From: Marsupella aquatica
Taxonomy: Eukaryota > Plantae > Marchantiophyta
Length of the DNA: 64,000 nucleotides
Assembly: GCA_973895155.1 (NCBI GenBank)
Contig: OZ316899.1
Span: 3,803,455 to 3,867,454, forward strand
Direction of reading: 5' to 3'
In this document: piece by piece, positions 27,756-64,000 of the stretch
How the letters are laid out: every line of letters begins with the position of its first letter
Numbering within the stretch: position 1 is the first letter of the stretch
Made by a program: the position numbers and the translations under genes
The notes under the pieces: model-generated
Databases searched by the model: none
Told to the model about the DNA's origin: nothing
The model's input: only the letters and a program-made list of their open reading frames with translations

Positions 27756-27960
27756 ATCCTGAATTCCGTTGCGTCAATGCTTCAGAGACTTTTGGGGATC
27801 CAAAAATAGCAAGGAACACAACTTTTGGGACCCCTGTCGGAGTTCCCTCTCCTCGAGTTACCATATTTCAAATGACAATGGTGATGATGCGAGTCGTAAT
27901 TCAGATGATATCGACTAGACGGGGACTCAACCTGGCATCCTAAGCGGAGCAGGAGAGGTG

Positions 27961-30900: not shown

Positions 30901-31376
30901 AGGCTTGAAAGGACCATAGTGTTAAGTAGTAGGAGTTGAAGAAGCCAAAGTATAGCAAGTAGGTAGTGACAACCTACCCATGTACTTCCTTTGAAATTCT
31001 TATGAAATTTCAGCGCGTTTATGGGAAAGAAATTGTTGATGTGCACTCATCTGAAATCTTGAGGCCCTTGTGGTCTAGCATGTTGCTTATATGATCTTTG
31101 TTAGTCCATAAGTCTTTTCTTTGGGTAGGGGAGACCTAGATTAATTGTCTTGCCGGGTAGGGGGACATTTCCAATGGTGGAAACCAAAGAATACTCATTT
31201 CTGGTGACGGAAACCAACTACATCTGCACAGTCTCAAGGAGAAGCAAAGGCTTAATGGAAATAGAGGTAGTTCCTTCTTATGGAGCATCCCTCCCGTAGT
31301 TCCTGGTGATAAAGAGCTATCAATTGCAAGCTTTTAGTACAATAAGGCTTATTAGCTCAAAAACAAGGGTCTAACA
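27961..31376 (+). mobile_element. Solo-LTR-like element D (3416 bp) with degenerate internal coding sequence
   Basis: TGTGAGCC...GGTCTAACA with 5-bp TSD AGGTG (27956-27960, 31377-31381). Removal restores the transposase frame AGEVLDLFATD. Confidence 0.9.
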
Positions 31377-42653: not shown

Positions 42654-45600
42654 CTAATTTGTGGAATGACTTTCATCTGATTCCAAATCATTCCTACTAC
42701 TACTACTGATGTCCTCACTGCTAAACTCCCTATCAGTTGACTCAGCAGACTCGTCCACATATCTCTTCACATGACCCGCCTCAACATCCATGAAAGGAAG
42801 GCTGTACAAATTCCTCCGAGCGCCACGATCTGACCTCCAACCTTTTCCTTCCCAAGTCATAACAAAAGTCTCATCTGCTTCAATTGCAGACTTCTCCGCA
42901 TAACAAGGTAGAGTGAATGATTTCTTAGGCGAGAAGAGAAAAGTGCCCTCAATTTCCTTTCGGAGCCAAAATCTCTCCTCCGAGAACCAATCTACACGCC
43001 GATCACTGTAAGAAGAAAAATCAGCAGCCGATTAATTCAAGGTGGAAAAAACTGACTTAACTTTCTAAACACAGTTGGATTTGGTATGAGACAAGATAAG
43101 TACATTACTCCAGGTCAAATTCATCGTGGTCATCTTTCCCATCCGGAGCAGGAACTTTTGTTCTTCCACCACTCAATCCGGCAAGAGTAAACTCGTCATC
43201 TGAATCCTCGTCCTCCAATGACTCAATACCCATCCCGACAGTGATGTCTTCAATTTTCTTATGACGATCCAGAACCAACTTCAACGACTCCTGCGCAGCA
43301 TCATGGAGAAATTCCCTATCCTCAACCCCTACTACAAACCTCCCGGAGAGTTCCCCCGCTCGGAATGAACTTCCATCTCCAACATTCCAATCTAGCACAA
43401 TGTCTCTTGGCTTTGTCAAAAGCTCCATCACCGCCTGCATGGATCCAACAGATAATCGACAAGACCCTGCAAAAGCTAACTCAGTCCTGACATTGATTTT
43501 CGGGTAACAAAGACTGAGTAACTTCTTATGAGATGCATCCTCGGATGTTGCCATGGGGATGTACTTCGGGTCCTTGGGGATCTTCCCATCAAATTCAGTT
43601 TGACAAAACACATCCAGATTGAGATTGCAAACCTGGAAAAGCAAAAAATATGTCAAATATTGAGGTTGTGAAGGCCAGCGACCTCGCTGGCAAAAAACAC
43701 CTATAATTTAAACCAAAAACTCTTGACATCTCACCTCAACATCAATGTCTGGCATCCACATTGGGCTACTCAACAAAACATGGTACTGGCGAAGATGTTT
43801 GAATTTATTCTTCTGCTCAATGGTAGCAAAAATCTGCTTCATGTGGTTAAATTCTCCACTATGGAGAACAACCACATATCCATCATCGGACAACCTGGGT
43901 CTCATGACTCCGAAGAAGTAATAAGGAAGTTTCTCCATCCAAACATTCCATTCTGGCACCTTCACATCAGTAACACGAGGCCTTAGTCCTGTAGGAAGAG
44001 CAATGAACCCAAGATGGGCACTGGTACCAGTGTAAGGCTTGCCATTGATTCTTAGGGGATTTGGATGTTCTGAAGAACTCAAAATCTCACTCAGCCAGCA
44101 ATCCCCCTCCCCCATCCATGAAGGTTGAACTTTCTTCAAAGCAATTGAGTCTGCTGTGAAACGTAAATTACTCTTGGCAAAGAAATGTCGATTCCCATCC
44201 AGTTGAAGTCCACGTATCCTCATCACACCCTCACTGATCGACCCTTCCTCGTCTTCTGAATCTAATAGCACTTGAACTTTTCTCTTCTTCTTAAGCTTAT
44301 CACCAATTGGTTTTGTCACAATCTCAAAATCTGGAGATTCAGGTTCAATGGGATCCTGTCGCCCACGATTCTGCACGGTCTGGACACTCTCTGAACCAGT
44401 CGACCTTCTCTTTTTTGGAAAACAAAAGAGAACCAAAAACCTCAGAAAATGAGAATTTGCAAAGAAAGGGCTAAACATTAGAAGCCGATTGAGAGTTAGG
44501 ACGATGAGGACACTTACTTCTCCTGCCGGAAACCTGAGAGGTCTCTTTTGACACCTCCTTCACAACATCCTTCTTCAATTTTTTGGAACGGCTTCTATCA
44601 ACAATTGGTGCAACACCAAGGCAAGCCTGCTCCATCGCCTCACACCCGGCCTGCACTGCTTTGAGGCTGGGCATTTTTGATTCAGAAATATAAAACTCTG
44701 GGACTAACCCATGATTTATCTTCTGCAAAGCAAGCTTCTCTGTCCCATCAAATGTCAGAGACCAATTCTTTGAATCTAAGTACCATGGACAGTGTAAAAC
44801 CTCCCATTCACTCATCTTCCGGAGTGGCTCAACGTCCTCACAAGGGTACATTGAGTAGTCGCCACATTTTTGATTTCCTAAATTGTCAGTCACGTATTCG
44901 GCCCACTGGGAGAAACACGCGGGGTAACACCACCAGAATGCTCGATTGGCCACCTCCCGGTCAACAAAAAATTGGTATACATATCTTTTTGCCCTTCTCC
45001 GAAATGCGACAGTATCTATCTTTTCCCCTACTTTTGGGGCCCAAATGCTCTTGAAAAACCTGGATTTAACTCGCTGCAAAAAGTCCTCAAACTCACCACT
45101 AATATCAAGAACAAGTGATGCCTTGTTCTTCTCTGAGGCTGAAAGAACTCAAGATTCAAGGACACTTAGAATCAGTTCTGAAACAGCTTCGGACAAAAGA
45201 GATCTAGCAATCAACTCTACTTGTTCCCACGTAGCCCACCTGTGCAGCCAGAGTTTAGTCTCACTATCTGAGAATTGCCCAGGATGAAAATATTGCTTCC
45301 GTAGCTCGGGCTTGCACTGCGCTTCAAGTAGATTGCAACAAAGCAGTGGGCTGAGAGATGTTACCCCGGTAAAAAGCCTCGCTCGATCAAGACCACATGA
45401 GACATTGCCTCTCCCTTTATCATCAGTCCTTTGTACTTCCTTCTGTTCTTTTTCATAGTAGTTGTGCATCTCCACACATTTTTGAAAGAAATCCCCGAAT
45501 TCGGGATTGAGAAGAGGAGCAATTTTTGGAACTTTAACATTACAATCAGATAGTTGCTCCTTCATCATTTCTCGTAGAGCAGTGTCCTTCGCAGCTTTTG

Positions 45601-46692
45601 ACAAAGGTTCTCCAAGATCCTCCTTGAGAGAAAACTTCTTCTGCAAATCTGTAGTCTGGGAAGCTATATTTGCAGCTGATAGAATGTAAATACAAGCATC
45701 CAGGGTCATATGTTTTGAATACCAGGAGGGTTTCTTCACATTTTGCATCTTTTGTTGGAACAACTTGAAATTGTCTGCATCAATCAAATCCTCGTAGACC
45801 GACAAGTCCGTGTTCAGTATCTTCTAGACACGATCTGCTTCCAGGACCCATGAATTCTCAACGTGGCATTGAGTGAGCCTGCCAATGAACAAAAGTATCA
45901 AAGATGTTTCGAGTACAAATCAGAGATAAGAAAACCCAAAATGTGAAGTGACAGACAGCATTGAATCAATCAGAACAGATCCGATGCTCACCGGTTCAGG
46001 GTATGCATTGCAGATTCAATCTGCACAAACGTGTCTTTCTCCCCTTTGAAAATCTTGGTGACAACACGAGGATGATATTTGATATCATGTGGGTTCTCGA
46101 TGGCCAGCAGATTCCACGAGTACAAACAATGATTACCATAAAAAATGTGAAACATTTTGTCCTTCAATATAGCAAAGTCTGGATGAGAATCGCACTCTCT
46201 CTCAAAATCTTTGTTCTACAACGCCCATATCAGATCCCAACCCATTTGAATGTTGTCATTGATGAACTGAACCTCACCATTCTCGTTCGTCATCTGAACG
46301 TAAAACCTGGGCGCGTCCTCAATGTAACCCTGAGCTCAAAACTCATTCTTGAGCATTTCGATTGCATTGGAATCAGTCTACAACGACCTGACAAGCTGCA
46401 TGTTTCGCATCCTACACAGTGGAATTCGAGGGGGAACAAGGGGATACCCAAATTTGTTTGGCCCAAAGTGGTAGAGGTGACGGTTGATCACCACGGAGAA
46501 CGGTTCCGACTTAGAAGACTCCATCGGTGGTGGCAAAATCTCCATTGGATCAACAAGTTTCCTTCAACGAGGTGTCTTCAAACCCGAAGCTAGTGCCTTG
46601 TTGGTAGTCAAAGACCTTGTCTCTCGACGCTGAGAAGCTGCAGACTGTGAAGCTTGAGAAGAGATAGACTCTGGTGATGCAAAATTTGCCAT
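42654..46692 (-). pseudogene. Spliced gene: ParB/Srx-like plus beta-class N6/N4 methyltransferase fold plus C-terminal domain (copy 2)
   Basis: RIPLCRMRNMQLVRSL...FYVQ...KMFHIFYGNHCLYSW; RLSDDGYVVVLHS; LLTKPRDIVLDWNVGDGSSFRAGELSGRFVVGVEDREFLHDAAQESL. Same four intron positions as copy 1; several TAG/TGA stops. Confidence 0.8.
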
Positions 46693-46764
46693 TGGCTGAT
46701 AAAGAAAATGGAAGGGAGTAACACACGAACAAAGCGTTGCAACGAGTACGGTGACTTCTAATTG

Positions 46765-46901
46765 GTATCCAAAGTCAGATTAGAGGGAGTATCCAAAGTC
46801 TCATTCGAGAGAGTATCCAAAGTAAAGCGAAGGACAACGACCGAGATTAGCAAAGGACCAAGCTGGGAATCCAAAGTTGGATTAGAGGGAGAATCCTAAG
46901 T
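46765..46901. repeat. 24-bp-period array of G(T/A)ATCCAAAGT, 5 cores, upstream of the ParB-MTase gene
   Basis: Cores at 46765, 46789, 46813, 46867 and 46891. Confidence 0.8.
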
Positions 46902-47879
46902 AATCCACATACTGTGAACTGCGTATCTGACATTGACAGGGAATAATCCAACGTCCCTCACAGATGGCAATAAAAAATGCAAGTCTCTTTTAAACAGCAT
47001 CGGTTGAAGTTGGAACGTCATGAATACGCTGAGCAACTAGAATAACCGTAATATTCAGCATTAACCCCCATGCGACGTTCCCTTTAGAGGTTGTTAACGG
47101 GAAACTATCAATTTTAATGTTGACCAACCTTCTATTTTACCGTTGGGTTTTCGTTGGGAAAGACTTATGAGTAAACCATACCCATATATTTCTGGGTCAT
47201 TACAGTTTGAGATTTTAGCCAGCGAGATCGCTATCCAAATGGACATCAGATTTTCAACGGTAATATATTAATACAAAAGAATGTAAACCCTAAATTTTAA
47301 GCGTTTCTGATTCTTATTTAATTTTTAGGGACTCTAAATGCCTTTCCCCAAACCAACATTTGTCTAAAGAAAGTATAAACATTAAAGATGTTAGATGGAA
47401 AATATATTTTCAGTCGTTGTTTCTTGGTCATCCATTATGGGTAGCGAGATTGCTAGCTTAACTAGGGTATTGAATAAGACAACAAAATATTAGGGATATT
47501 GACCTTTACTACATCAAAGAGATAAGATGAATATTGGTGATTTTTGCTAGCAACATCACTGACCTTATAACTAGGGTTTATTTGACAACTTTATGTATTA
47601 GTCATTGACTCAATGGATCCTCTAGAACCGTCTGGATTTTTGCAGGCGAGATCGCTGGCAATACATTCTTTCTGAGTTGAAGGTTTTGGTTTGTGAAGTT
47701 TGACAAAAAGTAGCCTTTAAAATTAATCTTCTATATTTCCTTTGTATTTTCCCCAAAATGAAGGGCTTGACAAAATATTCCTTTATATCGTACCCTACAG
47801 GTCCCTAAATGGTCTCTAAATAGTCTCTAAATGATCTCTCTATATAGAATATGACATGTATAGTGGTTAATCAACAATA

Positions 47880-48404
47880 TCTCCAGATGGTGCTCGAAAG
47901 GATGAATTCATTCCAAGAAGTCTTGATGGAGGAAGAGTTTGGGAGGTCAAGTCTGGAGATATTGTTGAGCTTGTTTCCGGAAAGGATGAAGATCCTGAGT
48001 CATTTGCAGATGTTCCAGGGATCCCTTTCCATGGACAGAATTCTAAGATGATTCATGAACGGGTTTTTGTGGACCTGGACCCTCTAGAGTCTATAGGAAT
48101 TAATAATGAGGTGTCGGTGATGGGGTCAACAATTGTGGTGGACAATTTGAAGGAGGAGGTGGTTGAACCTAAGGCTGTGGGTTCTGATAGATTGACCAAA
48201 GTCTACAGAATTGGTGCATTTGAAGCATTCTTGAAGATTACTGGGGCCAGTGAGCTTCCTAGATTCAGAAGAGATGTTTCATGGGTTGATTTCCAAGTTG
48301 ACCGGCTTCCCACAAGTTACAATGGAGACAAGGTCTATGAGCTTCCTCCGGTGGAATCTAGATTTGGTCAAGGGCAAGGGCTTCTAGACATGGACCGTGA
48401 TAAT
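47880..48404 (+). pseudogene. 5' part of the MULE transposase, copy 2
   Basis: RVWEVKSGDIVELVS and LPTSYNGDKVYELPPVES...MDRDN match RVWDLKCGSVVEIVS and LPTSYNGNCIFELPPVEG...MDRDN of copy 1. Confidence 0.85.
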
Positions 48405-52074: not shown

Positions 52075-53895
52075 TTAGACCAAATTACTCATTACCCACC
52101 GTACCGGCAGCGTCACTAGCTCCCTGCTTAATTGTGAAGCGTCCTCGCGAACATCACTCTCGGCGTCGTCATCTTGATGGTGGTACTTCTTCACACGATC
52201 GTAACTGACTCGCGTGGGTAGTAAATTGTTGGCGTACGTTGCGAGTTCCAAAGATCCGTTAGGGTAGATCTGATTGACTAGGAAAGGCCCTAACCAACGG
52301 GTATGAAGCTTCCCCGGAAACTGCATGTACCTACTATCGTACAGCAGGACTAGATTGCCTATCACGACGTCAACCTTCCGTAGTCCTTTGTCGTGCTGCT
52401 TCTTGGAAGCTACCTGCTGCTTGACGACGTGTTGAGCTGCCCGTAGCCGTGCTTCTTCTAATGCTTCAATCTGATAAGCTCTGTCCGATGAACTTTCAGC
52501 TTCGGGTAAGCGATCCCGAATGCTTACCCGGGGAGTGTGGACTTCGAACTCAACGGGCACCAACGAATGTTGGCCGAACATGAGAAAGTACGGGCTATGA
52601 CTCATAGTAGTCTTGTAAGCCAGATTATACGAATACACCGCTGCGTACAACTTGTCATCCCAATCCATTTTGTGCGTGGCTACTGTCTTGTTGAGGATCT
52701 TCCCGATGATACCATTGGCCCTTTCTGTCAGCCCGTTGGCTTTAGGATGATACGGGGTAGTCTTGCGGTGCTTGACTAGGTAACGCTCCGTAAGCTGGGC
52801 TACGGTATCATTGAGGAAGTGTGTTCCACGGTCGCTTACTAACTCCAAGGGCGGCCCGAACCGGGTGAAGATCTGCTCGTATAAGAACCTGGTGGTGGTT
52901 GCAGCATCGTCCTTTACCGTAGCCCGTGCTTTGACCCACTTGGTGGAGTAATCTATAGCTAGCAGCATGTACCTGCATCTTCGTCGTCGGGTAACGGGAG
53001 TGAACCGTCCGATATAATCGATACCCCACTTTTCAAAAGGTGCCAAGGGGAGCACGGATGTGAGAGGGTGATGATGAGATCGTCGTGGGGACCCAGCCCG
53101 CTGACACAGGTCACAGCCCTTGATGAAACGTTGTATATCCTGATGCAACGTAGGCCACCAATACCCTGAATCCAGAATCTTTTGGGCTGTCGTGATAGCC
53201 GCGAAATGACCTCCAGCTTCTTCTTCATGCAAGGCCCGTATAACGTTGAGCGTCTCCTTGTACTCTAAGCAGCGTCGTAGCTTCCCATTAACGCCTTCCT
53301 TATGTAGGTGACCTTGTATCATAGCGTACGGCCCGGCCTTCCGTAAAAACACAGCGGCGGCCTCCTGATTGATGCCGTCGGGGATGCGGCCTGTCAAGAG
53401 GAAGGTGATTATTGAGCCGTACCACGTAGGCGCTCCCGCCCCTACGTGGAACAACTCCTTGTCCGGAAAAGTATCATTAATTGGCTGATCGACTGGTACG
53501 CCGTCCAGCTTTGAAAAGAAGTCGGCGTTGAGATGTGCTTTTCCTGGCCGAACCCGAACTTCATAGTTAAATTCCTGGAGAAGTAGCATCCACCGGGCTA
53601 TCCGTCTTGTCACATCCGCTTTGTTGACCATGTACTTCAGGCTATCATGATCCGTGTGGAATATGACCTTGTATCCGAGCAGGTAGTGTCGGAAATTTTT
53701 ACATGAGTAGATTATTCCCAGAGCTTCTCGATCAGTGGGAGAATAATTTTTTTTGGCTGTGAATAGTTGACGGCTAGCGAAGTAGATGGGGTGGTCACGT
53801 CCGTCCTCATCAAGCTGACTGAGTACAGACCCGATACAGAACCCTGACACATCGACGTACACATGGAACTCCTTATTCCAGTCCGGGGTGACCAT
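52075..53895 (-). CDS. Gypsy pol: RNase H plus integrase (open, 606 aa)
   Basis: FHVYVDVSG...REALGIIYSCKNFRHYLLG; HHCC Zn finger; WGIDYIG, SDRGTHF, NGLTERANG; WLGPF motif; no chromodomain seen. Confidence 0.97.
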   Translation of the reverse strand: MVTPDWNKEFHVYVDVSGFCIGSVLSQLDEDGRDHPIYFASRQLFTAKKNYSPTDREALGIIYSCKNFRHYLLGYKVIFHTDHDSLKYMVNKADVTRRIARWMLLLQEFNYEVRVRPGKAHLNADFFSKLDGVPVDQPINDTFPDKELFHVGAGAPTWYGSIITFLLTGRIPDGINQEAAAVFLRKAGPYAMIQGHLHKEGVNGKLRRCLEYKETLNVIRALHEEEAGGHFAAITTAQKILDSGYWWPTLHQDIQRFIKGCDLCQRAGSPRRSHHHPLTSVLPLAPFEKWGIDYIGRFTPVTRRRRCRYMLLAIDYSTKWVKARATVKDDAATTTRFLYEQIFTRFGPPLELVSDRGTHFLNDTVAQLTERYLVKHRKTTPYHPKANGLTERANGIIGKILNKTVATHKMDWDDKLYAAVYSYNLAYKTTMSHSPYFLMFGQHSLVPVEFEVHTPRVSIRDRLPEAESSSDRAYQIEALEEARLRAAQHVVKQQVASKKQHDKGLRKVDVVIGNLVLLYDSRYMQFPGKLHTRWLGPFLVNQIYPNGSLELATYANNLLPTRVSYDRVKKYHHQDDDAESDVREDASQLSRELVTLPVRWVMSNLV

Positions 53896-53913
53896 GATAG
53901 ATGCGGTGGTGAG

Positions 53914-54174
53914 TCATTTACGGAGTTCTTCGAAAGAAATCCGTCTCCTAGGTGTCTCCTCGATCACCGCGTCCTTCTTCATCATCTCAGTTAAGGGTAA
54001 CGCAATTTTAGCAAAATCTTTAATGAACCGACGATAATACCCTACATGGCCCAAAAAGGATCGTACCGCTTTTTGATCTACAGGAAACACCACCGCCATC
54101 CAAGCCGCGACCTTCTCTTGGTCCACTCGATACCCCGTTTGGACACACGATGCCCGAGTAACACTCCTTCCTCT
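53914..54174 (-). pseudogene. Gypsy reverse transcriptase C-terminal segment, interrupted by the CACTA
   Basis: VRSFLGHVGYYRRFIKDFAKIALPL. Joining to 63966-64000 gives LKLHPTKCFFGVEEGVLLGHRVSKRGI. Confidence 0.92.
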
Positions 54175-54229
54175 CACTAGTACATTTTAGGGCCATTATC
54201 CAAAAGCTATTCCGTGGGATCCCTTCGGA

Positions 54230-54740
54230 AACTTCATTTCGAAAAAAACAAGTATCCGACGCAACTCGCTTCGCAATATCCCATCCAATCCTCATGGGAC
54301 ATCAACCATCGGACTTACTTCAGACTTTCCGTTGACAATGCCGACGGACTTTCCGATTCCAACCCATTCGCAAACCTGCACATCTGATCTACTACGTATC
54401 GGACACCAACAAACAGACCCCGTCTCAAAACGACGATTGTCCGATAGTAATCGTATGGGATAGTTTCATATTTTTTGCTACGTACATTGCGATGCGTGTA
54501 GTATCGGAGTTTACGATATGTTTAGTATCGGAGTTTGCCTTTGGAGAATTATCGGATGTTGCGTTAGACCTAGTAACGGATAGTGCGATGTAATGAGGTT
54601 TGGAAAATCCAACGACTTTGCCATCGGACACATTGTTTTGATGTTTTGGTTTTGTTAGAGGGGTCCGATGCGGAAAGTATCGGATATTGCGAAGGGGATT
54701 GAAACAGAAGGACCGATGAAGGTACAAACGGACATCATAA
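54230..54740. repeat. Left subterminal TCCGAT/ATCGGA repeat field of the CACTA
   Basis: More than ten copies in both orientations; the same motif also clusters at 56270-56390 and 57640-57800. Confidence 0.85.
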
Positions 54741-55478
54741 CGGATGGCTTTGTTACAATAGCTAGGGTTTCATGGGTGGTTATTGGGGTTTGAGAACATC
54801 AACCAATATATTAGGGTCCAAAGGAGGCTCAAAACATGTGGTCAAAATCTCATATTAAAAAAGGGGATGACCCCAATATGTACAAAATGGAATGGGCCTA
54901 CCTAGTAGACCCATCTCGGCGACTGTTTGCTCCATGGGAACACCTAAATGGAGCACTAAGTAGAGACTACACTCCATGGCACCTGCTAAGATCTAATCAA
55001 AGCTACTGGACCTACCTACACGGCACTAACCTCTAAAAAGGTGTGTTCCGTCCCTTCTTCTTCTTGTGGCGAGAGCAAAGGTGGGGAACAGGTGCGGGAT
55101 CCACAACCGGTGGAGCCACCTGCTGACCAGATGGTGGGTCTAATCCTATCCTACCCCCTGACCCACTAGATGCACCGCTAGGCACGGTAGAAGTCCCACC
55201 AACCCCTGACACAGCAGAGTGAAAGGAGGCCTCGCCCCCCCGGCAGACCTACTAGAGTGATGAGAGGCTGTAGCTGCAGATGATGCATGTGGCCCATGCC
55301 GTGCTGTACTGCCACCTGACTCACGAGATGGCGCTAGACCCCTAGAGCCACCATCATCCAAGTCACCACTGCCTCTACAAGGGGGGCTAGGTGCAGCAGA
55401 TACTCCTTGACGAGGGGGGTTAGGTGCAGAGCATACTCCTGAGCGATGGTGTGGGCCTGCACCACCTCTACTACCCCC

Positions 55479-57516
55479 TCAAGGCCCCGGCCTCGCAGCC
55501 CGCGATGCTCCCCGTAACTGATGAGAGCTCACACCATCAACAACATGTGACCCACCTCCCCTCCCTCCCAATGTGAGGGTAACATGAGGTATCTGGGCAG
55601 TAGGGGCAACTCTAGGAACAGTCTGGGAAACTATAGGAACAGCCCGGGAAACTCTAGGAACAGTCGCGGTAGCTCTAGGCTCCCTCTGTAACCCTGCCTC
55701 GGATCCAGAGTACTCATCATCTGACTCCCCAGACCCCTCCTCCTCCTCCTGCACATTACAATTAATTAAAGTAAGGAACTTGGTCAAAACTCTACAAATG
55801 TAGCACTGCTCTAGCTAAGCAAAACATTGTCCCAACTTAGGTAGGGGGAGGGAACAAAATTTACCTCTCCCAGCTCATCCTCAATTTGTCGCTTTAGAGC
55901 ACGGGGTCCATCCCTTGCTGCTAGTTCCCTCTCTTTTGGATCAATGGGACGACCATACTCTCTCTCCTGACATTTCAAAAATTAAAAGACCACATCAGCA
56001 CAATAAATTTAGTTTCAACCATAAAATCCACTCCCTATACCAAACTTCTCCCTCTCAAAACTCTATGCCTTATATACAACTTCTATAACTTACTTAACCC
56101 CTAGCAAATACTCTAAACCCTAAAAAAATCACAAGTGAAGTCAAGAAGGGGTCCATTCCGGAATTTTCATGCAAGTCAAGCATCCCTATCCTATGCAATC
56201 AAAAAACCGTAAACCCTACCCGTTTTAAACAAAATAAACCCAAATTCACTCAAAATATACGCGTTCCGATGCAGCATCCGATGTGGATTCTATCGGACTG
56301 ATATCGGACCCCTCATCCGCCAAATTAGAATGCTACTATGTCCGATGTGGGTTCCGATGCGGGTTACAACGAACAACCATCGGACTTAACAGGCCCGAGA
56401 GCAAAAAATGGGGGATCAAAACGTGATAAAGCAAAACGGGACAACCAAAATGTTCACTCTTTGCAAGAGAAGTCAGGTGGTCAGGGAGAGGAGTAAGGGA
56501 GGAGGGAGCTAGGAGGGAGGAGGGAGGAGCCACTTACAAACTCGGCCTTCAATCGATTGGAGCCGCCTTGCCCCATCCGGTGAGTCACAATGGGCCTCTC
56601 TTCTACTCGCTTCAATGCTGCTATGATGTTTGTAGGAGGTTTTTGAAGTCTTGCTGCTTGAGCTGCCCACTGTCGAAGGTTCAGTTGGAGGGGGGCCATG
56701 TCAATATCCTCCCAGACAGCTCGCTTTTCTTCTGCAATCCTGATTTCGTTGTCCCAATGTCGTCTCTTTAGCCAGGCTCGAACAGAGAGCTCCTCCTCAA
56801 GCCAAGCTGTCCATGCATCCTGGGGAATCACATCTGGACACTGGTGCTCCCTGACCACCTCTGCATCTATTGGCAAATCAGTAAGGTAATCCCTCATCTT
56901 CTCCCGCACATGATTCCTTGCATCTGAAACAGAGGCTGAAATTCGATTGTTTAGAAATCTGTCTTCAAGGTGGGCTCCGTTCTTGAATCTTTCTTTGATC
57001 TGCTCCCAAACCCTGGTCCTCTCCTCCTTTGTTTTCTTACCCCAGTAGTCTAGCGGCCCAAAATTTGCCCTCACAACCTGCAAGAATTGGCTGCGGAACA
57101 AATTGTAGCTCCTGGGCATTGGAGCCCCACCTGAATTGATAGCCAGCTCAGGTTGCAGAGCCCTCTCAGCCTCCCTTCGCCTTTGCTCCTCAACTCGCAG
57201 CCTCTCTGCCTCCCTAGCTTCTCTTCGAAGCTTTTTCTCCCTTTTCCAAGGAGAGAGAGCCTCCTCACCATTTGCCCTAGCCCTCTCCGCCTCTTTTCTC
57301 TTCTTCCTCGCCTCTTTCTCTGCTGCAAGGCCTGCTGCAGTAGCCTTCTCTGCCTCACCTTTTGAGGAGCAAAACCTGAAGCACCGGGACTACTCTTGCT
57401 GCATCCTCCACTGAAAGCCCTGCCTTGGCCACAAACAACTCCCTCATTATCTCCTCATATGGCCGGGATGGCCCAGCCCCGTCTCCCCCATCACCTGATC
57501 CTCCTTCCCTCACCAT
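55479..57516 (-). pseudogene. TnpA/Ptta-like (Transposase_24-like) gene, spliced and frameshifted
   Basis: RVWEQIKERF...CPDVIPQDAW...THRMGQGG; probable start MVREGGSG at 57516; transcribed away from Tnp2. Confidence 0.55.
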
Positions 57517-58524
57517 CTCTCCTTCTTCCCGAGCTCCTCCCCTCTCGGCCTTAGAAAATTTTCTGAAATGACTGATGTGCAAAGGAAGCCCCGTAGTGTG
57601 CGCCTTTGCAAGCGCATCGGGATTTACGGATTTCAAATTTTGAATAAAGTCCGATTGTTTCTGCTTTGGAATGTCCGTAGCGTACAATATCGAATGTCAA
57701 ATTGGACCTTCCGATACGTGTTGCATCGGACCCCTCCTCCGGCTTGTTATTCCTCACTTTTACAAAGTGTGATACGTTGGAAACGGTATCGGACCCCTCG
57801 TGTAATGTTATCGGATAGGGGTTATGTAGGGGTTATGTGGGGGTCATGTAGGTGTATGTGGGAAGGACGGGTTGTATTAACATTAATTAATCATCATGTA
57901 TGTTTGAATCAGGTTTTATAGGGCCATACATGTAGACACATACCGCAGGGGGTTGGCAATGGTGTCGTGGATGTGATATATCGACCTTCCTGCAATTTTG
58001 GGGTTTGTACCTGAATCCAGATTTTTTTGTGATATACTTTGGTTATCCATGTTCAATTTGCTAATATTCGTCTTTGGGTTTGATGTGCAGTACCTTGGTT
58101 TTGAAGGGGTGGTTAGGTTTTTGTAGGGTGTTAGCTAGGTAGGTTATTTTGCAATGACTATGCACAGTGTGAGACCGCGCATCCAAAAGGTATGATGCCC
58201 CATCCATTTATTCCTTGATCCTTTAGGCTATTTCAGGTTTGGCATGCAAGTTTTTATCATATGTGCTTGAGCTTGTTCTCAGCAATTGTAGATCACGCAT
58301 GCTCATTATGAAAATGTCCACCTTGTAGAGATTTTGGATATCCCCACACTTTGTGTGTAGAGAATACGGCCTAGTAGGCACGGTAGAGCGCGGGTACCAT
58401 TGAGGTATGGCAAGTGTTGTATATATGCATGTCTCTCATTCAATTGTTTTTCTAGACATAAATATTTGTCTTGCTGGTTTTTTCTTTCATCCAACATATT
58501 GTCATGGTTGTATGATATATGTAG

Positions 58525-58758
58525 ATGTCTGCTTTCGATAGTTCCACGTCGGATTCAGACTCAGACACGAGCTCGTCTGAGGAGGAGGTTCCTCCACCCC
58601 CTCCTCCAGACCAAGCTCGTGCTCGGCCACTAGGGTCCATACCTTGTTGGTGTGTGAGATGTAAGGGACTTGTGGTTCGACATGCCTGGGAGACTTGTGA
58701 GCACATTGAGAACTATGGTCGCCACGAGGGTGATACACCAGGTTATTTGCCTAGCCAG
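58525..58758 (+). CDS. Exon 1: transposase-associated Zn-binding domain
   Basis: CWCVRCKG...TCEHIENYG resembles the CPCxxC...HL..xG N-terminal domain of Tnp2; phase-0 donor CAG|GTAATA at 58758/58759. Confidence 0.7.
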
Positions 58759-58883
58759 GTAATAAATACGTCCCTCCTTCATTCCATGAAATTCCAATAA
58801 TTAGTCCACAAATGCTAAATTACTTTGCATCTAAACAACAATTCATGTATTGATTTGTGTCAAATCATTGTTTGTTGAAATAG

Positions 58884-59828
58884 GTGCCTCGTAGACCCCC
58901 ACCTTGTCTGGTTGATAATGCTATGTGGTTGGAAGGGTTGCTAGCAAGGGCTAGGGAGTTGCTTGCATCTCCCCTTGCCCATCCACCTCTTAGTCCCCCT
59001 GCTCCTATCCCCACACATGCGCATGTAGACAAGGATGCACCGGTCTCTCGACCCGAGGAAATGGATACTAGGGTCCTACGTACACGTTCACGGTCTCGCA
59101 GACGTAGACGACAATATGAACCGGTGGAGCAGGTAGAGAATCGAGAGGAGGTGTTACGTAGTGATCGACCACCCGGAAATGGAGATTATATTTGTGTTGA
59201 GGGCCGGTTTGGACTATCTTATCTCACTGGTAGGGCTGCTGATGTTTGGAAGGACTTTTCTCCTAGTCTCTTCAAATTTCCAGATTTCATTCATACTGAT
59301 GAACCAGTTGACATATGGGGTCGGCCTTGGATAGTGAAGGCGTCCTCTATTGGTGCTGATATAGGATATGGTCTATATGCTTTGGAGGACATTGTGGTCC
59401 CTCCAAAGCCATGGAGACGTGGATATGACGGAGAGCACCTTTTCCCTTACATTGGGGCTGTATATAATGCAAAGAGTTGGAAGACTTTGTTGCGTCAGCA
59501 CCCAAGCTGGGGGGTGTATGCCTTGAGGATGGACTCAGACCCAGATGAGGTTTTGACTAGGCCGTGGCATTGTAGGATGATTGATGGTGACCCTATTCGG
59601 AATGGTAATTTAGCAGGGTACATCAATAGTACAATGGGTAGAGGTAGAGATTTTGAGGCTAATGTAGAGTGGATCCAAATTTTTGGCCCTCCTAGAGATC
59701 TGTATTTTGTGAAACATATGGATGACCATATCATGACAGTAGCCATTAGGACTATTAGAGCCGGTGAGGAGATATTGTGTGAGTATGAGTGGGACGCCCC
59801 AAAATTGTCCCTATGTTGTCGTCCATGA
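58884..59828 (+). CDS. SET-domain protein exon inside the CACTA (open, 314 codons)
   Basis: VKASSIG..GYGLYALEDI, FPYIG, GNLAGYINST, VAIRTIRAGEEILCEYEW follow the SET motif order; acceptor TAG|GTG at 58883/58884 is in frame with exon 1. Confidence 0.85.
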   Translation: MPRRPPPCLVDNAMWLEGLLARARELLASPLAHPPLSPPAPIPTHAHVDKDAPVSRPEEMDTRVLRTRSRSRRRRRQYEPVEQVENREEVLRSDRPPGNGDYICVEGRFGLSYLTGRAADVWKDFSPSLFKFPDFIHTDEPVDIWGRPWIVKASSIGADIGYGLYALEDIVVPPKPWRRGYDGEHLFPYIGAVYNAKSWKTLLRQHPSWGVYALRMDSDPDEVLTRPWHCRMIDGDPIRNGNLAGYINSTMGRGRDFEANVEWIQIFGPPRDLYFVKHMDDHIMTVAIRTIRAGEEILCEYEWDAPKLSLCCRP

Positions 59829-59886
59829 TAGTATGTTGGACTTACATGCATGTAAATCTTACATTGAATTAATGAGATTCATGATG

Positions 59887-59890
<4 letters not shown>

Positions 59891-59918
<28 letters not shown>
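59891..59918. repeat. (AT)14 microsatellite
   Basis: Directly visible. Confidence 0.98.
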
Positions 59919-59920
<2 letters not shown>

Positions 59921-59972
59921 ATGATTGTAATGAGATTTATGTTAATGAGATTGCATTGATGTTGTATGATAG

Positions 59973-62900
59973 AACCAATATGTACAATCTGATATTGGGG
60001 TCATATCACGAGCTATGCGACAACACATTGTTGAGGCCATGGTGGCCAACCATGGGCATGATGGAGGGATGCAAGAGGATGATGTACAACATGAGGGTGA
60101 TAATCCTACTCAAGCACATCTGGATGAGGAGAGGGCCATGGATGAGCTCATGGACCAATTTTATGATGATGATGTTGATATTGGTATGGAGGATATGGGT
60201 ACAACTGATGACAACACCACTCATCCACAACCTTCTAGGGGGGGACAGAACAAGGATTGGGAGGAGGCTCAACGTCATGCTTGTACTCGCATATTTGAGG
60301 GTAGCACCTTATCTCGGCTGTCCGCAGTAATGTTGTTGCTGAATGTGCAGCAAAGACATGGGGTCAACAACCTACTTTTGGATGATGTTTTTTGTACCTT
60401 GCATGATCGTATTTTGCCACCAGGCAATACCATGCCAGCCTCTTGGAAGGAGGCAAAACAAGTGTTGAAGTCCATTGGCCTCAAGTATGTAGTGATACAT
60501 GCATGTGTGAATGATTGCATTCTTTTTAGGGGGGAGCATGAGAATGCAACTGCATGTCCTAAGTGTGAGAAGCCGCGCTACCGTGATGACATGTTGACAG
60601 GGAAGGTGCCTCAAAAGGTTATGCGATACTTTCCTCTCATCCCCCGATTGCAACATCAGTACCGTTGTGCAGAGTTAGCTGAGTACATGGTATGGCACTC
60701 AAAGAATTGTTCTGATATGGCTACGAACTCTAGTGCCATGCGGATGATGGTTGACTCTCCTGCCAATCGATTTGTTGAGGGCAGATGGGGGGAGTTCAGC
60801 ACTGAACCATGACATGTTCGCCTTGGCTTGGCAGCTGATGGTATCAGCCCTTTTGCATTGGCGGGTAAAGCAAAACCATATTCAGTATGGCCAGTAGTTT
60901 TGACTAACTACAATATCCCTCCATGGATGGCCATGAAGAAAGGTCATTTATTGCTCTCCATGATCATCCCGGGTCCTAAGCAAGTAAAAAAGATTGACAT
61001 CTACTTGCAACCATTGATTGATGAGCTTTTGCAACTGTGGAGAGGAGTGGATTGTTATGATGGACGTCGCAATACAGGAGGTGTACCTCGTGTGTTTACC
61101 CTCAAGGCCATCCTTATGTGGACCATGCATGACCTACCAGGTATGACCTGGTAAACCTTAGCTTATTTCCTTGATGTACGACCTTAAATTTAGTGTGCAT
61201 TAACCTTAATTATTTCATAATTGGCTGGTTGTATATGGGCTTGGTACAGGGTTTGGGTATATCTCTGGATTGCAAACATCAGGCTATCGAGCTTGCCCTT
61301 CATGCGGACCGGATTTAGAGGGAGTGGCAAGACGCAAGTCAAGTACTTTGCGTAAGATAGTTTACATTGGTCATACCAAATATCTTCCAGCAGACCATCC
61401 TTGGAGGAGTGATCATTTCTTGTATGACACTGATGAGGGCCAACCTGATACTCGTCCTCAACCTCAGCGAAAGGATCCAACATATTGGAGAGAGGTATGG
61501 GAGAGAGTTCAAGACCCTGATGATCCATTACAGTTTCTCCGATGTGGCATGACCCGTTTATCTGCATTGTCATAGTTGCCATATTGGTCAAAGATGCCCA
61601 TTAATCACTTGTTGGATGCAATGCACATTGAGGGAAATGTGGGGAGATCATTGATTTGTCATCTATATGGGGAGAAGAACCACAACTGGAGAGAAAGTTG
61701 TGAGGAGATGGGGATGCATGGTCTTTTGGGTTTTTGGCCATCTTTGGACCCCCCTGGTGATCCCCCTAGCATCCATCCTCCTTGGGTTTTGACCAGGGCA
61801 GAGTGCATAGAGTTTTGCAGACGGATTGGGTCAATGAGGTTTCCCATAGGTTATGGTGCCAATCTTCGTAAGGCATTTGGGGGGGATGATTCTTCAAAAT
61901 GGCCATCGTACCTGAAAACACATGATTATCATCGGTTACTAGAACATGTCATTCCAGTTGCAATTATTGGATTGGGTAGTGAGGAACTTTGTGATGCTCT
62001 TTGGTCATTGGGCAAGTTTTTGAGATGGGTATGTCAGAAGGAGTTACCAGAGGATGACATTGCTGCGATGGAGATATTTGGAGTAGAGATTGTTTGCAAG
62101 TTGGAGAAGGCACTTCCACCCTCATTCTTTGATGGTCAGGTTCATTTCCTCATACATTTAGTGCGCGAGGTAGCAATTGCAGGCCCGGTACATTGTCGAT
62201 GGATGTATTGGGTAGAGCATTATATGGGGGTGATGAAGTCATATGTCTCTAATCGGGCTAGGGTGGAAGGTAGCATTGCAGAGCGTCATCTTGGAGCAGA
62301 GAGTATGTTTGATTGTACAAACATAGTTGCCACACTAGATCCAAGGACACCTAGGGGATGGATAGATGAGGTGACACGAAAGGCAGACTATGAGGATGAT
62401 AGACTCACTGGGGCATCAGGAGAGCGTGGCTTAGGCTCAGCAGAGCGTTTGCAACTTACAACATTTATGTTGTATAACTCACCAGAGGTTGTAGGGGAGT
62501 GGACAACATTTTATGAGGAGGAGAAGCAAAATAGTCGACGGCCACGGTTGTTTCCCAAGTTTCATCCATACATGAAATCAAAGTTGTTAGAAGTGGATGC
62601 CTTGGTGGGTACCGGAGACAGTATATTACATTACCCACAAGTGACTGATAAGCTTCGTACCTTGGTTCATGGTCCATTGCTTAAAGTCACGACTCGGACA
62701 GCAATGTGGTCAAAGGGGAGGCATTTCCGTGTGGAATGACTTGATGAGAAGAGAGCAGCTACACAAGATTGTGGGGTGATGGGTTGGTTCACCCAGGATT
62801 CCCAGAGTAGCACGTCGGACATGAACCCCATTCGCTCCACCGTGGCCCATTATGGGAAGATTGATGAGATCCTGACAGTGAAGTACCATGCACATACTAC

Positions 62901-63207
62901 TTTGGAGGAGGTGGTATTTAAGTGCAAATGGTTCAAGATGAATCTTGTAGGCAACAATCGAACATGTGAAGATGATGCATGCGGATTTACCCGTTTGAAG
63001 ACATCTGCAAATAGTGTCATTAGTTCCAATTGAAGGTCCTCAGATCCCTTTGCCTTCCCACATCACCTTGAGCAGTGCTTTTACCTACCCTATCCAAAGG
63101 ACCTCCAATTGCCATATATCCCTAGATCAAGGTCTATAGTCCAAGAGAGACCCAATGTTGTTGTAGTGGAAGACAACGACATCCCCGACCCTCCACAAGC
63201 TAGTTAG
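59973..63207 (+). pseudogene. CACTA Tnp2/TnpD-like transposase (Transposase_21, DUF4218, DUF4216-like regions)
   Basis: IHACVNDCILF...CPKC, RYFPLIPRL, LGLAADGISPF, WPVVLTNYNIPPW, HDLPG, LDAMHIEGNV, FFDGQVHFLIHL, GPVHCRWMYWVEHYMGVMK, FKCKWF. Intron 61141-61249; four in-frame stops (60810, 61573, 62737, 63031) and no frameshift. Confidence 0.95.
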
Positions 63208-63419
63208 TACATTTTGTATGTAGCTAGGGCCCCCCGCAACCACACCACCTTCATGTTTTTTTTAATCGGCAATATAAAAGTTGGCATCATTACTTCTTTA
63301 ATTGTCATGGTATGCACATGCCCAAAATCTCTTGGTTATATATAGAAGCGACCTTACCTTATATACCCTTCCTAAGAACCCCCCCCCGCCTTATGTCCCA
63401 TTGACCGTCCCATGAAAAA

Positions 63420-63900
63420 ACCATCGGATTTCCATCGAACCTTCTAAAAACAAAAACCAGACTTTCCGATACTCCCAACTACGGACTATTCCATATAAAA
63501 CCCATCGGACACACATTTTTGATCCTCTCCACAACGGACGCCTTTTCCTCCTTTGTTGATGAGGTATCCGATCCAACATCCGACGGACAATGTCCGACAT
63601 AACCTTTTACGCACAAACTATGCAATCCTAAATCCAACGGACACAAACATCCGATGCATTCCGTGACGGTCCTAGTCCGATACAACTACCAACGCAAACA
63701 TCTTGCGATGCATTAAGGTTTAGATGTATTATGCGGTCATTGCGACATAGTTTTCGATATGTTTATTGTCGGACAATGTCCGATAGTAATAAGATGGGAC
63801 AACGTATGCGATGGGCTTTACATTGGAATGTGGAGGTCCGATGGGATCAGGATCGGAAAATACGTTGCGGGGCACATCGGATATTGTCCGAAGTGTTCGG
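63420..63900. repeat. Right subterminal TCCGAT/ATCGGA repeat field of the CACTA
   Basis: More than ten copies, mirroring the left field. Confidence 0.85.
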
Positions 63901-64000
63901 AATCGAATGGGTGAAGTTTGGCTCGAAAGGAGTATCAAAAAACCGCCAAAAATGTACTGGTGTCTACCCCAAAAAAACATTTGGTGGGATGTAGCTTGAG

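What the first reader, a model, noticed from the sequence alone, without database searches (positions are those of the whole stretch)
58525..59828. CACTA transposon carrying a SET-domain (lysine methyltransferase-like) exon
Seen: inside a fully delimited CACTA (TIRs, TSD, host RT frame restored on removal), an uninterrupted 314-codon exon has all SET motifs in order, including the GxG loop and the terminal Tyr (GEEILCEYEW). NHS is replaced by NST and there is no post-SET CxCxxxxC. It is joined in phase 0 to the Tnp2-type Zn-binding exon, so the SET domain would gain a transposase-derived module. Established: SETMAR is a SET-mariner fusion in primates; chlorovirus vSET methylates host H3K27; maize TnpA alters Spm methylation. 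Inference: a transposon-encoded histone or protein methyltransferase for self-regulation or anti-silencing. Caveat: the lack of stops is not significant by itself, since the Tnp2 stop rate predicts only about one.
Basis: partly seen in the sequence, partly recalled or inferred. Interest (0 to 1): 0.86.

Follow-up and report, generated by a model that had tools for sequence, protein, structure and literature searches.

The report
Liverwort CACTA transposon with SET gene
A family of cut-and-paste (CACTA) transposons in liverworts carries its own conserved gene for a SET-domain, lysine-methyltransferase-like protein inside the transposase gene; transposon-borne SET genes are known elsewhere, but I found no report of this arrangement in a land plant.

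Summary
A complete CACTA element lies at 54175-63962, with 14-nt inverted ends (13/14 matching), a TCT target duplication, and a host gypsy RT frame that is restored when the element is removed. Inside it, a 314-codon exon (58884-59828) passes Pfam's SET threshold. Its model has a confident SET fold, and 263 solved SET methyltransferases match it. GxG, YxG, Asn and the catalytic Tyr are present; NHS is NST, and there is no post-SET.

It is not a recent host-gene capture. The order Zn-module exon, SET exon, Tnp2 recurs in all nine loci with enough flank, including Calypogeia fissa and Riccia sorocarpa. SET and Tnp2 identities co-vary, and SET-core dN/dS is 0.17-0.29. No non-transposon relative was found.

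Phase-0 splice sites joining exon 1 to SET are conserved, and one Riccia copy has both in a single intronless ORF. The Tnp2 coding frame starts exactly at a conserved acceptor, so exon 1 is probably shared by alternative splicing. No RNA evidence was obtained.

This copy is decayed, with three stops in Tnp2. Activity and substrate are untested.

SET genes are already known in HarbingerS, MuDR, Helitron and Plavaka elements, so this is a new variant of a known kind. The scan noted seven more copies in this genome.

The parts
54172..54174 (.). left copy of the 3-bp target-site duplication (TCT)
   Evidence: TCT on both sides of the element
54175..54188 (+). left terminal inverted repeat CACTAGTACATTTT
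   Evidence: 13/14 identical to the reverse complement of 63949-63962. The C. fissa element L001 begins with CACTACTACATTAT at the homologous place.
54300..54700 (.). left subterminal cluster of the short repeat ATCGGAC / GTATCGGA, in both orientations
55338..57504 (-). second conserved gene of the element, on the opposite strand, with several exons; candidate TnpA-like protein
   Evidence: tblastx blocks match the 532-aa gene of C. fissa locus L001; open exon; weak language-model lead to Transposase_24. No Pfam hit.
57648..57815 (.). internal cluster of the same ATCGGAC repeat, between the two divergent genes (possible promoter region)
   Evidence: (I3, I22)
58525..58758 (+). exon 1: Ser/Asp-rich start, Pro run, then the Cys/His module CWCVRCKG...CEHIENYGRHEG; phase-0 donor CAG|gtaata
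   Evidence: dN/dS 0.09-0.20. The module is modelled as a knuckle plus helix at pLDDT about 86 in the Riccia intronless homologue.
58759..58883 (+). 125-nt intron, gt...ag
   Evidence: same donor and acceptor in W, L001, L005 and L006. The C. fissa gene model P0001 uses this junction.
58884..59828 (+). SET exon: 314 codons plus stop. It has a helix and a basic stretch RVLRTRSRSRRRRRQY (aa 63-78) in a loosely conserved linker, then the SET core at aa 95-307.
59364..59372 (+). GxG loop (G161-Y-G163), cofactor-binding motif I
   Evidence: G161 at 90% or more, G163 invariant; one search aligns it to GRG of LegAS4
59625..59633 (+). N248-S249-T250 in place of the canonical NHS
   Evidence: Ser249 is conserved at 90% or more across the family. 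LegAS4 has NFS at this place.
59784..59786 (+). Tyr301, the C-terminal catalytic tyrosine of the SET motif (GEEILCEYEW)
59829..59972 (+). AT-rich spacer with a (TA)n run. Inferred to be the 3' end of the SET message and, for the transposase message, the rest of the first intron.
   Evidence: inference
59973..63173 (+). Tnp2 transposase exons (Transposase_21, DUF4218, DUF4216). The frame opens exactly at atag|AACCAA. In this copy it is broken by stops at 60810, 61573 and 62737.
63420..63890 (.). right subterminal cluster of the ATCGGAC repeat
63949..63962 (-). right terminal inverted repeat (reverse complement CACCAGTACATTTT)
63963..63965 (.). right copy of the TSD (TCT)

Best explanation
Shown. 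The SET exon is an integral, long-kept accessory gene of a clade of Tnp2-type CACTA transposons in liverworts. It lies in what would be the first intron of the transposase gene. It is spliced in phase 0 to exon 1, giving a protein of about 390 residues: a Cys/His module, a loosely conserved basic linker, then a SET core. It ends just after the catalytic Tyr.

Inferred, fairly strongly. The transposase reading frame also needs an upstream phase-0 exon. Exon 1 is therefore probably shared, and one promoter gives either the SET protein or the transposase by alternative splicing. Maize En/Spm makes TnpA and TnpD from one transcript in the same way.

Inferred, weaker. The SET protein is an active lysine methyltransferase. 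The shared N-terminal module would bring it to the same DNA or partner as the transposase, so that it modifies chromatin, or a transposition protein, at the element's own copies. It could counter host silencing or tune the element's activity; neither the direction nor the substrate is known.

This copy. The window's element is old and decayed. Its transposase is broken, and it carries CpG-to-TpG changes.
For: SET fold:
- Pfam SET is above the gathering score.
- The AF2 model has pLDDT above 90 over aa 100-305.
- Foldseek gives 263 PDB matches at E<=1e-3; every listed match is a SET lysine methyltransferase, and LegAS4 is the top one.
- Swiss-Prot and ESM Atlas searches agree.

Family-wide conservation:
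- G163, G191, Y194, D234 and N260 are invariant across 38 sequences that share as little as 25% identity with the window's protein. Y301, E296, S249 and N242 are conserved at 90% or more.
- dN/dS is 0.24-0.34 for the whole SET exon and 0.17-0.29 for the core, at dS 0.37-2.1.

Linkage to Tnp2:
- The order exon 1, SET, Tnp2 is present in the window, C. fissa L001, R. sorocarpa L002 and L003, and metagenome/SRA loci L004, L006, L007, L010 and L011.
- A further contig without DNA has Transposase_21 downstream of its SET gene.
- SET-core and Tnp2 pairwise identities co-vary, r 0.83.

No host parent:
- An exhaustive phmmer of 1.84 billion representatives gave only 87 hits. Every named one among the 30 looked up is from one of two liverworts.

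Joining of exon 1 to SET:
- CAG|gt and atag|GTG are conserved in W, L001, L005 and L006.
- Riccia L002 has the module and SET in one 468-codon ORF.

Shared exon:
- The Tnp2 frame opens exactly at atag|AACCA in W, L001 and L006.
- The peptide NQ[YF]V..D..V..RA is conserved, with synonymous changes, upstream of the first Met. That Met is absent in L006.
- The canonical Tnp2 homologue P0140 carries its Zn module (PF13963) directly before the homologous region.

NST need not abolish activity:
- LegAS4/RomA have NFS at that place and are active H3K14 methyltransferases (abstracts listed: 10.64898/2026.05.29.728679, PMC10653858).
Against: - No RNA evidence. The only runs that hold the sequence behaved like genomic DNA: contigs run straight through the intron, and there are no joints at 58758/58884 or 58758/59973.
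- The His of NHS matters in some SET enzymes. From my own knowledge, SUV39H1 H324 mutants are inactive, so a Ser there could mean weak or no activity.
- Homology of exon 1 to the canonical Tnp2 N-terminal domain is not statistically established.
- W and L001 have an in-frame Met 14 codons after the acceptor, and the C. fissa annotation starts its Tnp2 model there (P0128). A separate Tnp2 start is therefore not excluded.
- No substrate or targeting data exist.
- This copy's transposase is dead, so nothing can be said about expression from this locus.
Confidence: 0.6

Rival explanations
1. The SET domain is kept as a non-catalytic module (pseudo-enzyme). It would act as a binding or scaffolding partner of the transposition machinery or of histone tails, not as a methyltransferase.
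For: The canonical NHS is NS[ST] throughout the family. There is no post-SET. The Pfam score is only just above threshold and covers only the C-terminal half of the model.
Against: GxG, YxG, Asn248 (present in most members), Asn260 and the catalytic Tyr301 are conserved over deep divergence, which is what an active site under selection looks like. All of these align in register with LegAS4, an active enzyme that also lacks the His. Many active SET enzymes lack a post-SET (own knowledge, for example SETD8 and the viral vSET).
Confidence: 0.2
2. Two independent genes lie side by side. The exon 1 plus SET gene has its own promoter and terminator, and the transposase is transcribed and translated separately from a start just downstream of 59973. 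No exon is shared.
For: W and L001 have a Met 14 codons into the Tnp2 frame, and the C. fissa annotation models two genes (P0001, P0128). No RNA data show a shared exon.
Against: The Tnp2 frame opens exactly at a conserved pyrimidine-tract/AG acceptor in three loci. The 14 codons before the Met are conserved as protein with synonymous changes, and the Met is Ile in L006. Without exon 1, this Tnp2 would lack the N-terminal Cys/His module that the canonical Tnp2 homologue P0140 carries before the homologous region.
Confidence: 0.25
3. SET and transposase are made as one fusion protein, SETMAR-like, by splicing from the tail of the SET exon into the Tnp2 exon.
For: The Riccia gene model P0049 joins the SET tail to the Tnp2 acceptor. 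L001 has a good GTGAGG donor three codons before the SET stop.
Against: W and L006 have no phase-0 GT donor after the catalytic Tyr. Nearly all 38 aligned family members stop within about 15 residues of the Tyr motif. P0049 comes from a copy with a frameshift inside SET, so the model is probably a predictor's bridge.
Confidence: 0.07
4. A recent transduplication (Pack-CACTA style): a fragment of a host SET gene picked up by this one element, with no function for the transposon.
For: Gene-fragment capture by CACTA elements is common in plants (own knowledge). The intact ORF in this single copy is not significant on its own.
Against: The same gene sits in the same place in elements that share only 31-47% SET identity, in two liverwort classes. 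dN/dS is well below 1. No non-transposon relative came up at E<1e-3 among 1.84 billion representatives. The gene has a complete domain with its own conserved splice sites.
Confidence: 0.02

Closest known systems
Plavaka (CACTA/EnSpm-superfamily) elements of red algae with accessory gene PAG2 (bioRxiv 10.1101/2025.02.11.637652)
   Same: A DNA transposon of the same superfamily that stably carries a SET-domain accessory gene beside the transposase. [quoted passage not shown]
   Different: PAG2 fuses an N6-adenine DNA methylase domain (PF01555) to SET and is part of a three-gene cassette. Here SET stands alone behind a small Cys/His module, sits inside the transposase gene's first intron, and apparently shares its first exon. 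The host is a land plant, and the transposase is the plant Tnp2 type (Transposase_21/DUF4218/DUF4216).
HarbingerS and MuDR families of oomycetes, and Helitrons, that carry SET genes (Kojima & Jurka 2014 Repbase Reports, as cited in PMC12730594; also cited in 10.1101/2025.02.11.637652)
   Same: Transposon-borne SET-domain lysine-methyltransferase-like genes, so the general idea is already described.
   Different: Different transposon superfamilies and hosts. I found no report of a shared-exon arrangement. Sequence relatedness of those SETs to this family was not tested, because no sequences were available to the tools.
Maize En/Spm (the founding CACTA element): TnpA and TnpD from one transcript by alternative splicing (own knowledge)
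   Same: Same superfamily. One promoter and a shared first exon give two proteins with different jobs. Subterminal short repeats lie at both ends and near the promoter.
   Different: In En/Spm the second product is the DNA-binding TnpA. Here the alternative product is a SET-domain protein, and a separate TnpA-like candidate is encoded on the opposite strand.
Legionella effectors LegAS4/RomA (PDB 5czy, 8swi)
   Same: Best sequence-profile match (E 0.007) and best structural match (E 6e-7). They share the loss of the His in NHS (NFS there, NS[ST] here) and the lack of a post-SET Zn cluster. They are active histone H3K14 methyltransferases.
   Different: Identity is only about 21%. LegAS4/RomA carry ankyrin repeats and are secreted bacterial effectors. 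The similarity is too weak to claim common descent beyond the SET superfamily.
SETMAR (primate SET-mariner fusion)
   Same: A SET domain and a DNA-transposase gene in one locus, linked by splicing.
   Different: SETMAR is a host gene that captured a transposase. Here an active-type transposon family carries the SET, and SET and transposase are alternative products, not one polypeptide.
VANDAL (MuDR) VANC anti-silencing proteins of Arabidopsis (cited in PMC12730594)
   Same: A transposon-encoded accessory protein thought or shown to act on the element's own epigenetic state.
   Different: VANC is not an enzyme of the SET type. The mechanism here is unknown.

Membership tests
SET-domain lysine methyltransferase superfamily (PF00856) | Profile match above the curated threshold | tested here: met
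   26.4 bits against a gathering score of 22.4, E 9.5e-6, but only model positions 43-104
SET-domain lysine methyltransferase superfamily (PF00856) | SET fold (beta-rich fold shared with solved SET domains) | tested here: met
   The AF2 core has pLDDT above 90. Foldseek gives 263 PDB matches at E<=1e-3, and the listed ones are all SET enzymes. TM normalised by the target is 0.5-0.7 for single-domain SETD8 and MLL1 chains.
SET-domain lysine methyltransferase superfamily (PF00856) | Cofactor and catalytic motifs: GxG, YxG, NH(S/x)C, C-terminal Tyr | tested here: inconclusive
   GxG, YxG, Asn248 and Tyr301 are present and conserved. The His is replaced by Ser throughout the family. LegAS4 also lacks the His and is active.
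SET-domain lysine methyltransferase superfamily (PF00856) | Methyl transfer from S-adenosylmethionine to lysine | not testable with these tools
   needs a biochemical assay
SUV39/SET2/EZH-type SETs with flanking Zn clusters | post-SET CxCxxxxC (and pre-SET/AWS/CXC) cysteine clusters | tested here: not met
   The protein ends 13 residues after Tyr301. The tail is DAPKLSLCCRP, and there is no cysteine cluster before the core.
CACTA / En-Spm DNA transposons | Terminal inverted repeats beginning CACTA/CACTG | tested here: met
   Left end CACTAGTACATTTT; right end CACCAGTACATTTT, with one mismatch in the fourth base
CACTA / En-Spm DNA transposons | 3-bp target-site duplication | tested here: met
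   TCT/TCT, and the host RT frame is restored on removal
CACTA / En-Spm DNA transposons | Tnp2/TnpD-type transposase | tested here: met
   Transposase_21 E 2.8e-32, DUF4218 E 3.3e-28, weak DUF4216. In this copy it is interrupted by three stops.
CACTA / En-Spm DNA transposons | Subterminal short repeats in both orientations | tested here: met
   ATCGGAC-type 8-mers cluster at 54.3-54.7 and 63.4-63.9 kb, with two internal clusters
Pack-CACTA / transduplicated host gene fragment | A closely similar host parent gene, with the fragment confined to one or a few young copies | tested here: not met
   No non-transposon relative at E<1e-3. The gene is present in all nine loci examined, down to 31% identity.
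Plavaka PAG2-type accessory gene | N6-adenine DNA methylase domain fused to SET | tested here: not met
   Only SET is found in the 314-aa exon and nothing in exon 1
SETMAR-like SET-transposase fusion protein | SET and transposase in one polypeptide | tested here: not met
   There is a stop at 59826-59828 and no phase-0 donor after Tyr301 in W and L006
Tnp2 N-terminal 'Transposase-associated' domain (PF13963), for exon 1 | Profile similarity to PF13963 | tested here: inconclusive
   1 of 9 homologues at E 0.056. hhalign to P0140 aligns CxCxxC...EH..G in register but only at E 0.22.

The most novel reading that the evidence does not exclude
Liverwort CACTA transposons make, from one promoter and one shared first exon, both their transposase and a chromatin writer. 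The writer would carry the same N-terminal targeting module, so each element marks its own chromatin (or its own transposase) with lysine methylation. That would be a self-targeted, transposon-encoded histone-code enzyme in a land plant. Together with the DNA-methyltransferase-bearing MULE and gypsy elements noted elsewhere in this genome, it would be part of a wider set of epigenetic enzymes carried by transposons.
Probability: 0.3. Interest if true: 0.8.

Novelty: new variant of a known kind. Interest (0 to 1): 0.6.

Why it matters
Transposon-borne SET genes have been catalogued in oomycetes, in Helitrons and in red algae. As far as I could find in the searched papers, none has been tested for function, and none was reported from a land-plant CACTA element.

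This family offers several things for such a test:
- a compact enzyme core of about 210 residues;
- clear natural variation, and many copies;
- a defined arrangement (SET exon inside the transposase's first intron, with a shared first exon) that makes a specific, testable prediction about targeting.

Liverworts include genetically tractable species. If a tractable species carries the family, one could ask directly whether a transposon uses histone or protein methylation to escape silencing or to limit itself.

There is also an annotation point. These genes are currently filed as ordinary 'SET domain-containing protein' host genes in the C. fissa and R. sorocarpa annotations. That would inflate counts of host chromatin modifiers.

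Tried and rejected
1. My first TIR scan required [CT]AGTG at the right end and missed the true end CTGGTG. The exact CACTACAA at 63161-63168 turned out to be Tnp2 coding sequence conserved with C. fissa. The ends were then found from the subterminal repeats and the broken RT.

2. RNA support: the four runs that hold the sequence gave contigs that run through the intron, with no splice joints. They behave as genomic DNA, and the single read-laying run is spent.

3. A profile search with the 38-sequence alignment reached no further SET families, so the origin of this SET within the superfamily stays open.

4. The right end of the C. fissa element L001 could not be located.

5. Pfam on exon 1, and on the minus-strand ORF, gave nothing usable.

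6. The second structure model (Riccia intronless protein) gave only a knuckle plus helix for the N-terminal module and a disordered linker, with no confident contact to SET. It did not identify the module's fold family.

7. Substrate specificity cannot be read from the fold matches. SETD8, MLL1, G9a/GLP, SUV39 and LegAS4 all score alike.
Full report
**What is at the coordinates.** The + strand holds a 78-codon exon (58525-58758) that ends in CAG|gtaataa. A 125-nt intron follows, ending in atag. Then comes an uninterrupted 314-codon frame, 58884-59828. Pfam scores the 314-residue product as SET (PF00856, E 9.5e-6, 26.4 bits against a gathering score of 22.4), on the C-terminal half of the model. 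Downstream on the same strand lie Tnp2 pieces: Transposase_21 (E 2.8e-32), DUF4218 (E 3.3e-28) and a weak DUF4216.

They are G161-Y-G163, Y189-I-G191 with Y194, GNLAGYIN248-S-T250, N260 and GEEILCEY301EW. The protein stops 13 residues after Tyr301 and has no cysteine cluster.

- My first scan missed the right end because it reads CTGGTG, not TAGTG.
- The subterminal ATCGGA-type repeats and a broken gypsy RT pointed to the true ends.
- The left end is CACTAGTACATTTT at 54175. The right end, read as reverse complement, is CACCAGTACATTTT and ends at 63962 (13/14 identical).
- TCT lies on both sides. After removal of the element and one TCT, the minus-strand RT reads LKLHPTKCFFGV|EEGVLLGH across the site.
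- The element is 9,788 bp long.
- ATCGGAC/GTATCGGA 8-mers cluster at both ends, at 56.26-56.38 kb, and between the two divergent genes at 57.65-57.81 kb.
- A second, multi-exon gene on the minus strand (about 55338-57504) is conserved with a 532-aa gene of the C. fissa element. It has no Pfam match, and only a weak language-model lead to Transposase_24, the TnpA family.

**It is a SET fold.**
- An AlphaFold2 model built on 38 homologues has mean pLDDT 80.6, and above 90 over residues 100-305.
- Foldseek against the PDB returns 263 matches at E<=1e-3. The listed ones are all SET lysine methyltransferases, headed by LegAS4, SETD8, MLL1, GLP/G9a, Clr4 and SUV39H2.
- Swiss-Prot models and the ESM Atlas agree.
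- A profile of the family against PDB sequences finds LegAS4/RomA best (E 0.007). GxG, YxG, GN..YIN, PN and the C-terminal Tyr all align in register.
- LegAS4 has NFS where this family has NS[ST] and canonical SETs have NHS. RomA and LegAS4 are active H3K14 methyltransferases (abstracts). Loss of the His therefore does not by itself mean an inactive enzyme.

**It is not a one-off capture.**
- The best homologue (59% identity) is a Calypogeia fissa protein whose gene model joins an exon-1-like peptide to the SET exon at the same junction.
- An exhaustive phmmer of 1.84 billion representatives gives only 87 hits at E<1e-3. Of the 30 clusters looked up, every named member is from C. fissa or Riccia sorocarpa. 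The rest are unnamed metagenome or SRA contigs. No canonical host SET family came up.
- In every locus with enough flank, the order is Cys/His exon, SET, Tnp2 on one strand. These loci are the window, C. fissa L001, R. sorocarpa L002 and L003, and metagenome/SRA contigs L004, L006, L007, L010 and L011. One further contig without DNA also has Transposase_21 downstream of its SET gene.
- Pairwise identities of the SET core (0.31-0.72) run parallel to those of Tnp2 (0.33-0.83), with r 0.83. The pairs are not independent. This is what is expected if the two have travelled together since the clade began.
- Five residues are invariant and sixteen more are conserved at 90% or higher, among them the GxG glycines, Ser249, Asn260 and Tyr301.
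- Nei-Gojobori dN/dS values: SET exon 0.24-0.34; SET core 0.17-0.29; N-terminal linker 0.29-0.56; exon 1 0.09-0.20; Tnp2 pieces 0.09-0.14.
- Earlier notes of this scan list seven more SET-bearing CACTA copies in the same genome. I did not check them. The laid DNA contigs show summed depths over the SET exon of the same order as over Tnp2, which is only a rough sign that most copies carry it.

**How the gene is built.**
- The phase-0 donor after exon 1 and the atag|GTG acceptor are conserved in the window, L001, L005 and L006.
- In Riccia locus L002, the Cys/His module and SET lie in one 468-codon ORF with no intron. This shows independently that they belong to one protein.
- The Tnp2 frame opens exactly at a pyrimidine-rich atag|AACCA acceptor in the window (59973), L001 and L006.
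- The 14 codons before the first Met are conserved as protein with several synonymous changes, and that Met is Ile in L006. The transposase coding sequence therefore very probably begins in an upstream phase-0 exon.
- The only candidate is exon 1. The SET exon ends in a stop, and in the window and L006 it offers no phase-0 GT after the catalytic Tyr.
- A canonical Tnp2 homologue (P0140) has its Pfam Transpos_assoc module directly before the region homologous to 59973-60809. hhalign puts the window's CWCVRCKG...EHIENYG in register with its CPCRKCRN...EHLMIHG, though only at E 0.22.
- The simplest reading is that an ancestral Tnp2 gene acquired a SET exon with its own stop in its first intron. 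Exon 1 would now feed either product.
- It is inference. The sequencing runs I could lay behaved like genomic DNA and gave no splice joints.
- L001 has a good donor three codons before the SET stop, and a Riccia gene model (P0049) fuses SET to Tnp2. That feature is not conserved, and P0049 comes from a frameshifted copy.

**State of this copy.** Tnp2 has in-frame stops at 60810 (TGA, where relatives have CGA/CAT), 61573 (TAG, against AAG/GAG) and 62737 (TGA, against CGC/CGT). Other copies in the laid contigs read C where the window has T at CpG sites inside SET: 59635, 59701 and 59814. This is an old copy decaying by CpG-to-TpG changes.

**What it most likely does.** Shown: the family encodes a conserved protein under purifying selection, with a SET fold and a largely intact active-site signature. 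A flexible basic linker (RVLRTRSRSRRRRRQY, possibly a nuclear signal) tethers it to a small Cys/His module, modelled as a knuckle plus helix at pLDDT about 86. Inferred: it is an active lysine methyltransferase, and the module it shares with the transposase brings it to the element or to the transposition complex. Whether it writes an activating mark, a protective mark or a self-limiting mark, or methylates a protein of the element, cannot be told from sequence. The fold matches do not discriminate between specificities.

**Comparison with what is known.**
- Transposon-borne SET genes are already described: HarbingerS and MuDR families of oomycetes (cited in PMC12730594), Helitrons, and PAG2 (N6-adenine methylase plus SET) of red-algal Plavaka elements, which belong to the CACTA/EnSpm superfamily (10.1101/2025.02.11.637652).
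- Six full-text searches found no report of a SET gene in a land-plant CACTA element, or of the shared-exon arrangement.
- I therefore rate this as a new variant of a known kind, not a new kind.
The En/Spm TnpA/TnpD alternative splicing is the closer parallel for the gene structure.

**Verdict.** Interest is moderate to high for transposon and plant-epigenetics specialists.

Noticed in passing
window 60810-60812, 61573-61575, 62737-62739: There are three in-frame stops in this copy's Tnp2 where the C. fissa and metagenome relatives have sense codons. At two of them the relatives have Arg CGN codons, one of them CGA. The transposase of this copy is a pseudogene.
   Followed up: yes
window 59635, 59701, 59814 (and 62737): The window has T where other copies in public DNA runs have C, always in a CpG context (ACG>ATG, CCG>CTG, CGT>TGT). 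This fits deamination of methylated cytosine in a silenced copy.
   Followed up: partly
window 55338-57504, minus strand: A second multi-exon gene inside the element runs divergently from the SET/Tnp2 unit. It is conserved with a 532-aa C. fissa gene, is rich in Lys/Arg/Glu, and has no Pfam hit. There is only a weak lead to Transposase_24 (TnpA-like).
   Followed up: partly
window 56265-56380 and 57648-57815: Internal clusters of the subterminal repeat ATCGGAC/GTATCGGA. One lies between the two divergent genes, where a shared promoter would sit. This recalls TnpA-binding sites over the En/Spm promoter.
   Followed up: partly
window 58313-58425: A block just upstream of exon 1 is conserved with C. 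fissa L001 9632-9744 in a tblastx comparison. It could be a 5' UTR or promoter element.
   Followed up: no
window 52075-54174 and 63966-64000, minus strand: The host of the insertion is a Ty3/gypsy element (606-aa integrase/RNase H ORF and an RT fragment). Its RT also carries its own frameshift about 40 codons downstream of the insertion site.
   Followed up: partly
L001 11146 (C. fissa); L003 (R. sorocarpa, protein P0049): Some copies have a usable donor just before the SET stop, and one annotated Riccia protein is a SET-Tnp2 fusion model. Another (P0094) joins the Cys/His module and half a SET to Tnp2. These are probably predictor artefacts on decayed copies, but a fusion isoform in some lineages is not excluded.
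   Followed up: partly
L002 16473-19574 (R. sorocarpa): A 977-aa Peptidase_C48 (ULP-like protease) gene lies on the opposite strand about 3 kb beyond the last Tnp2 piece found in a SET-bearing Riccia element. ULP domains are a known passenger of plant MULE/CACTA elements.
   Followed up: no
window 15692-32197 and 42654-48404 (earlier notes s1-329078, s1-328996): Other first-stage notes report MULEs with a ParB plus N4/N6 DNA-methylase gene in this same window, and a gypsy element with a C5 methyltransferase nearby. The red-algal Plavaka cassette combines ParB-like, N6-methylase and SET modules, so the parallel may be worth a joint look.
   Followed up: no
window 59890-59916: A (TA)n microsatellite lies in the 144-nt spacer between the SET stop and the Tnp2 acceptor. 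Contigs of the public runs break there.
   Followed up: no
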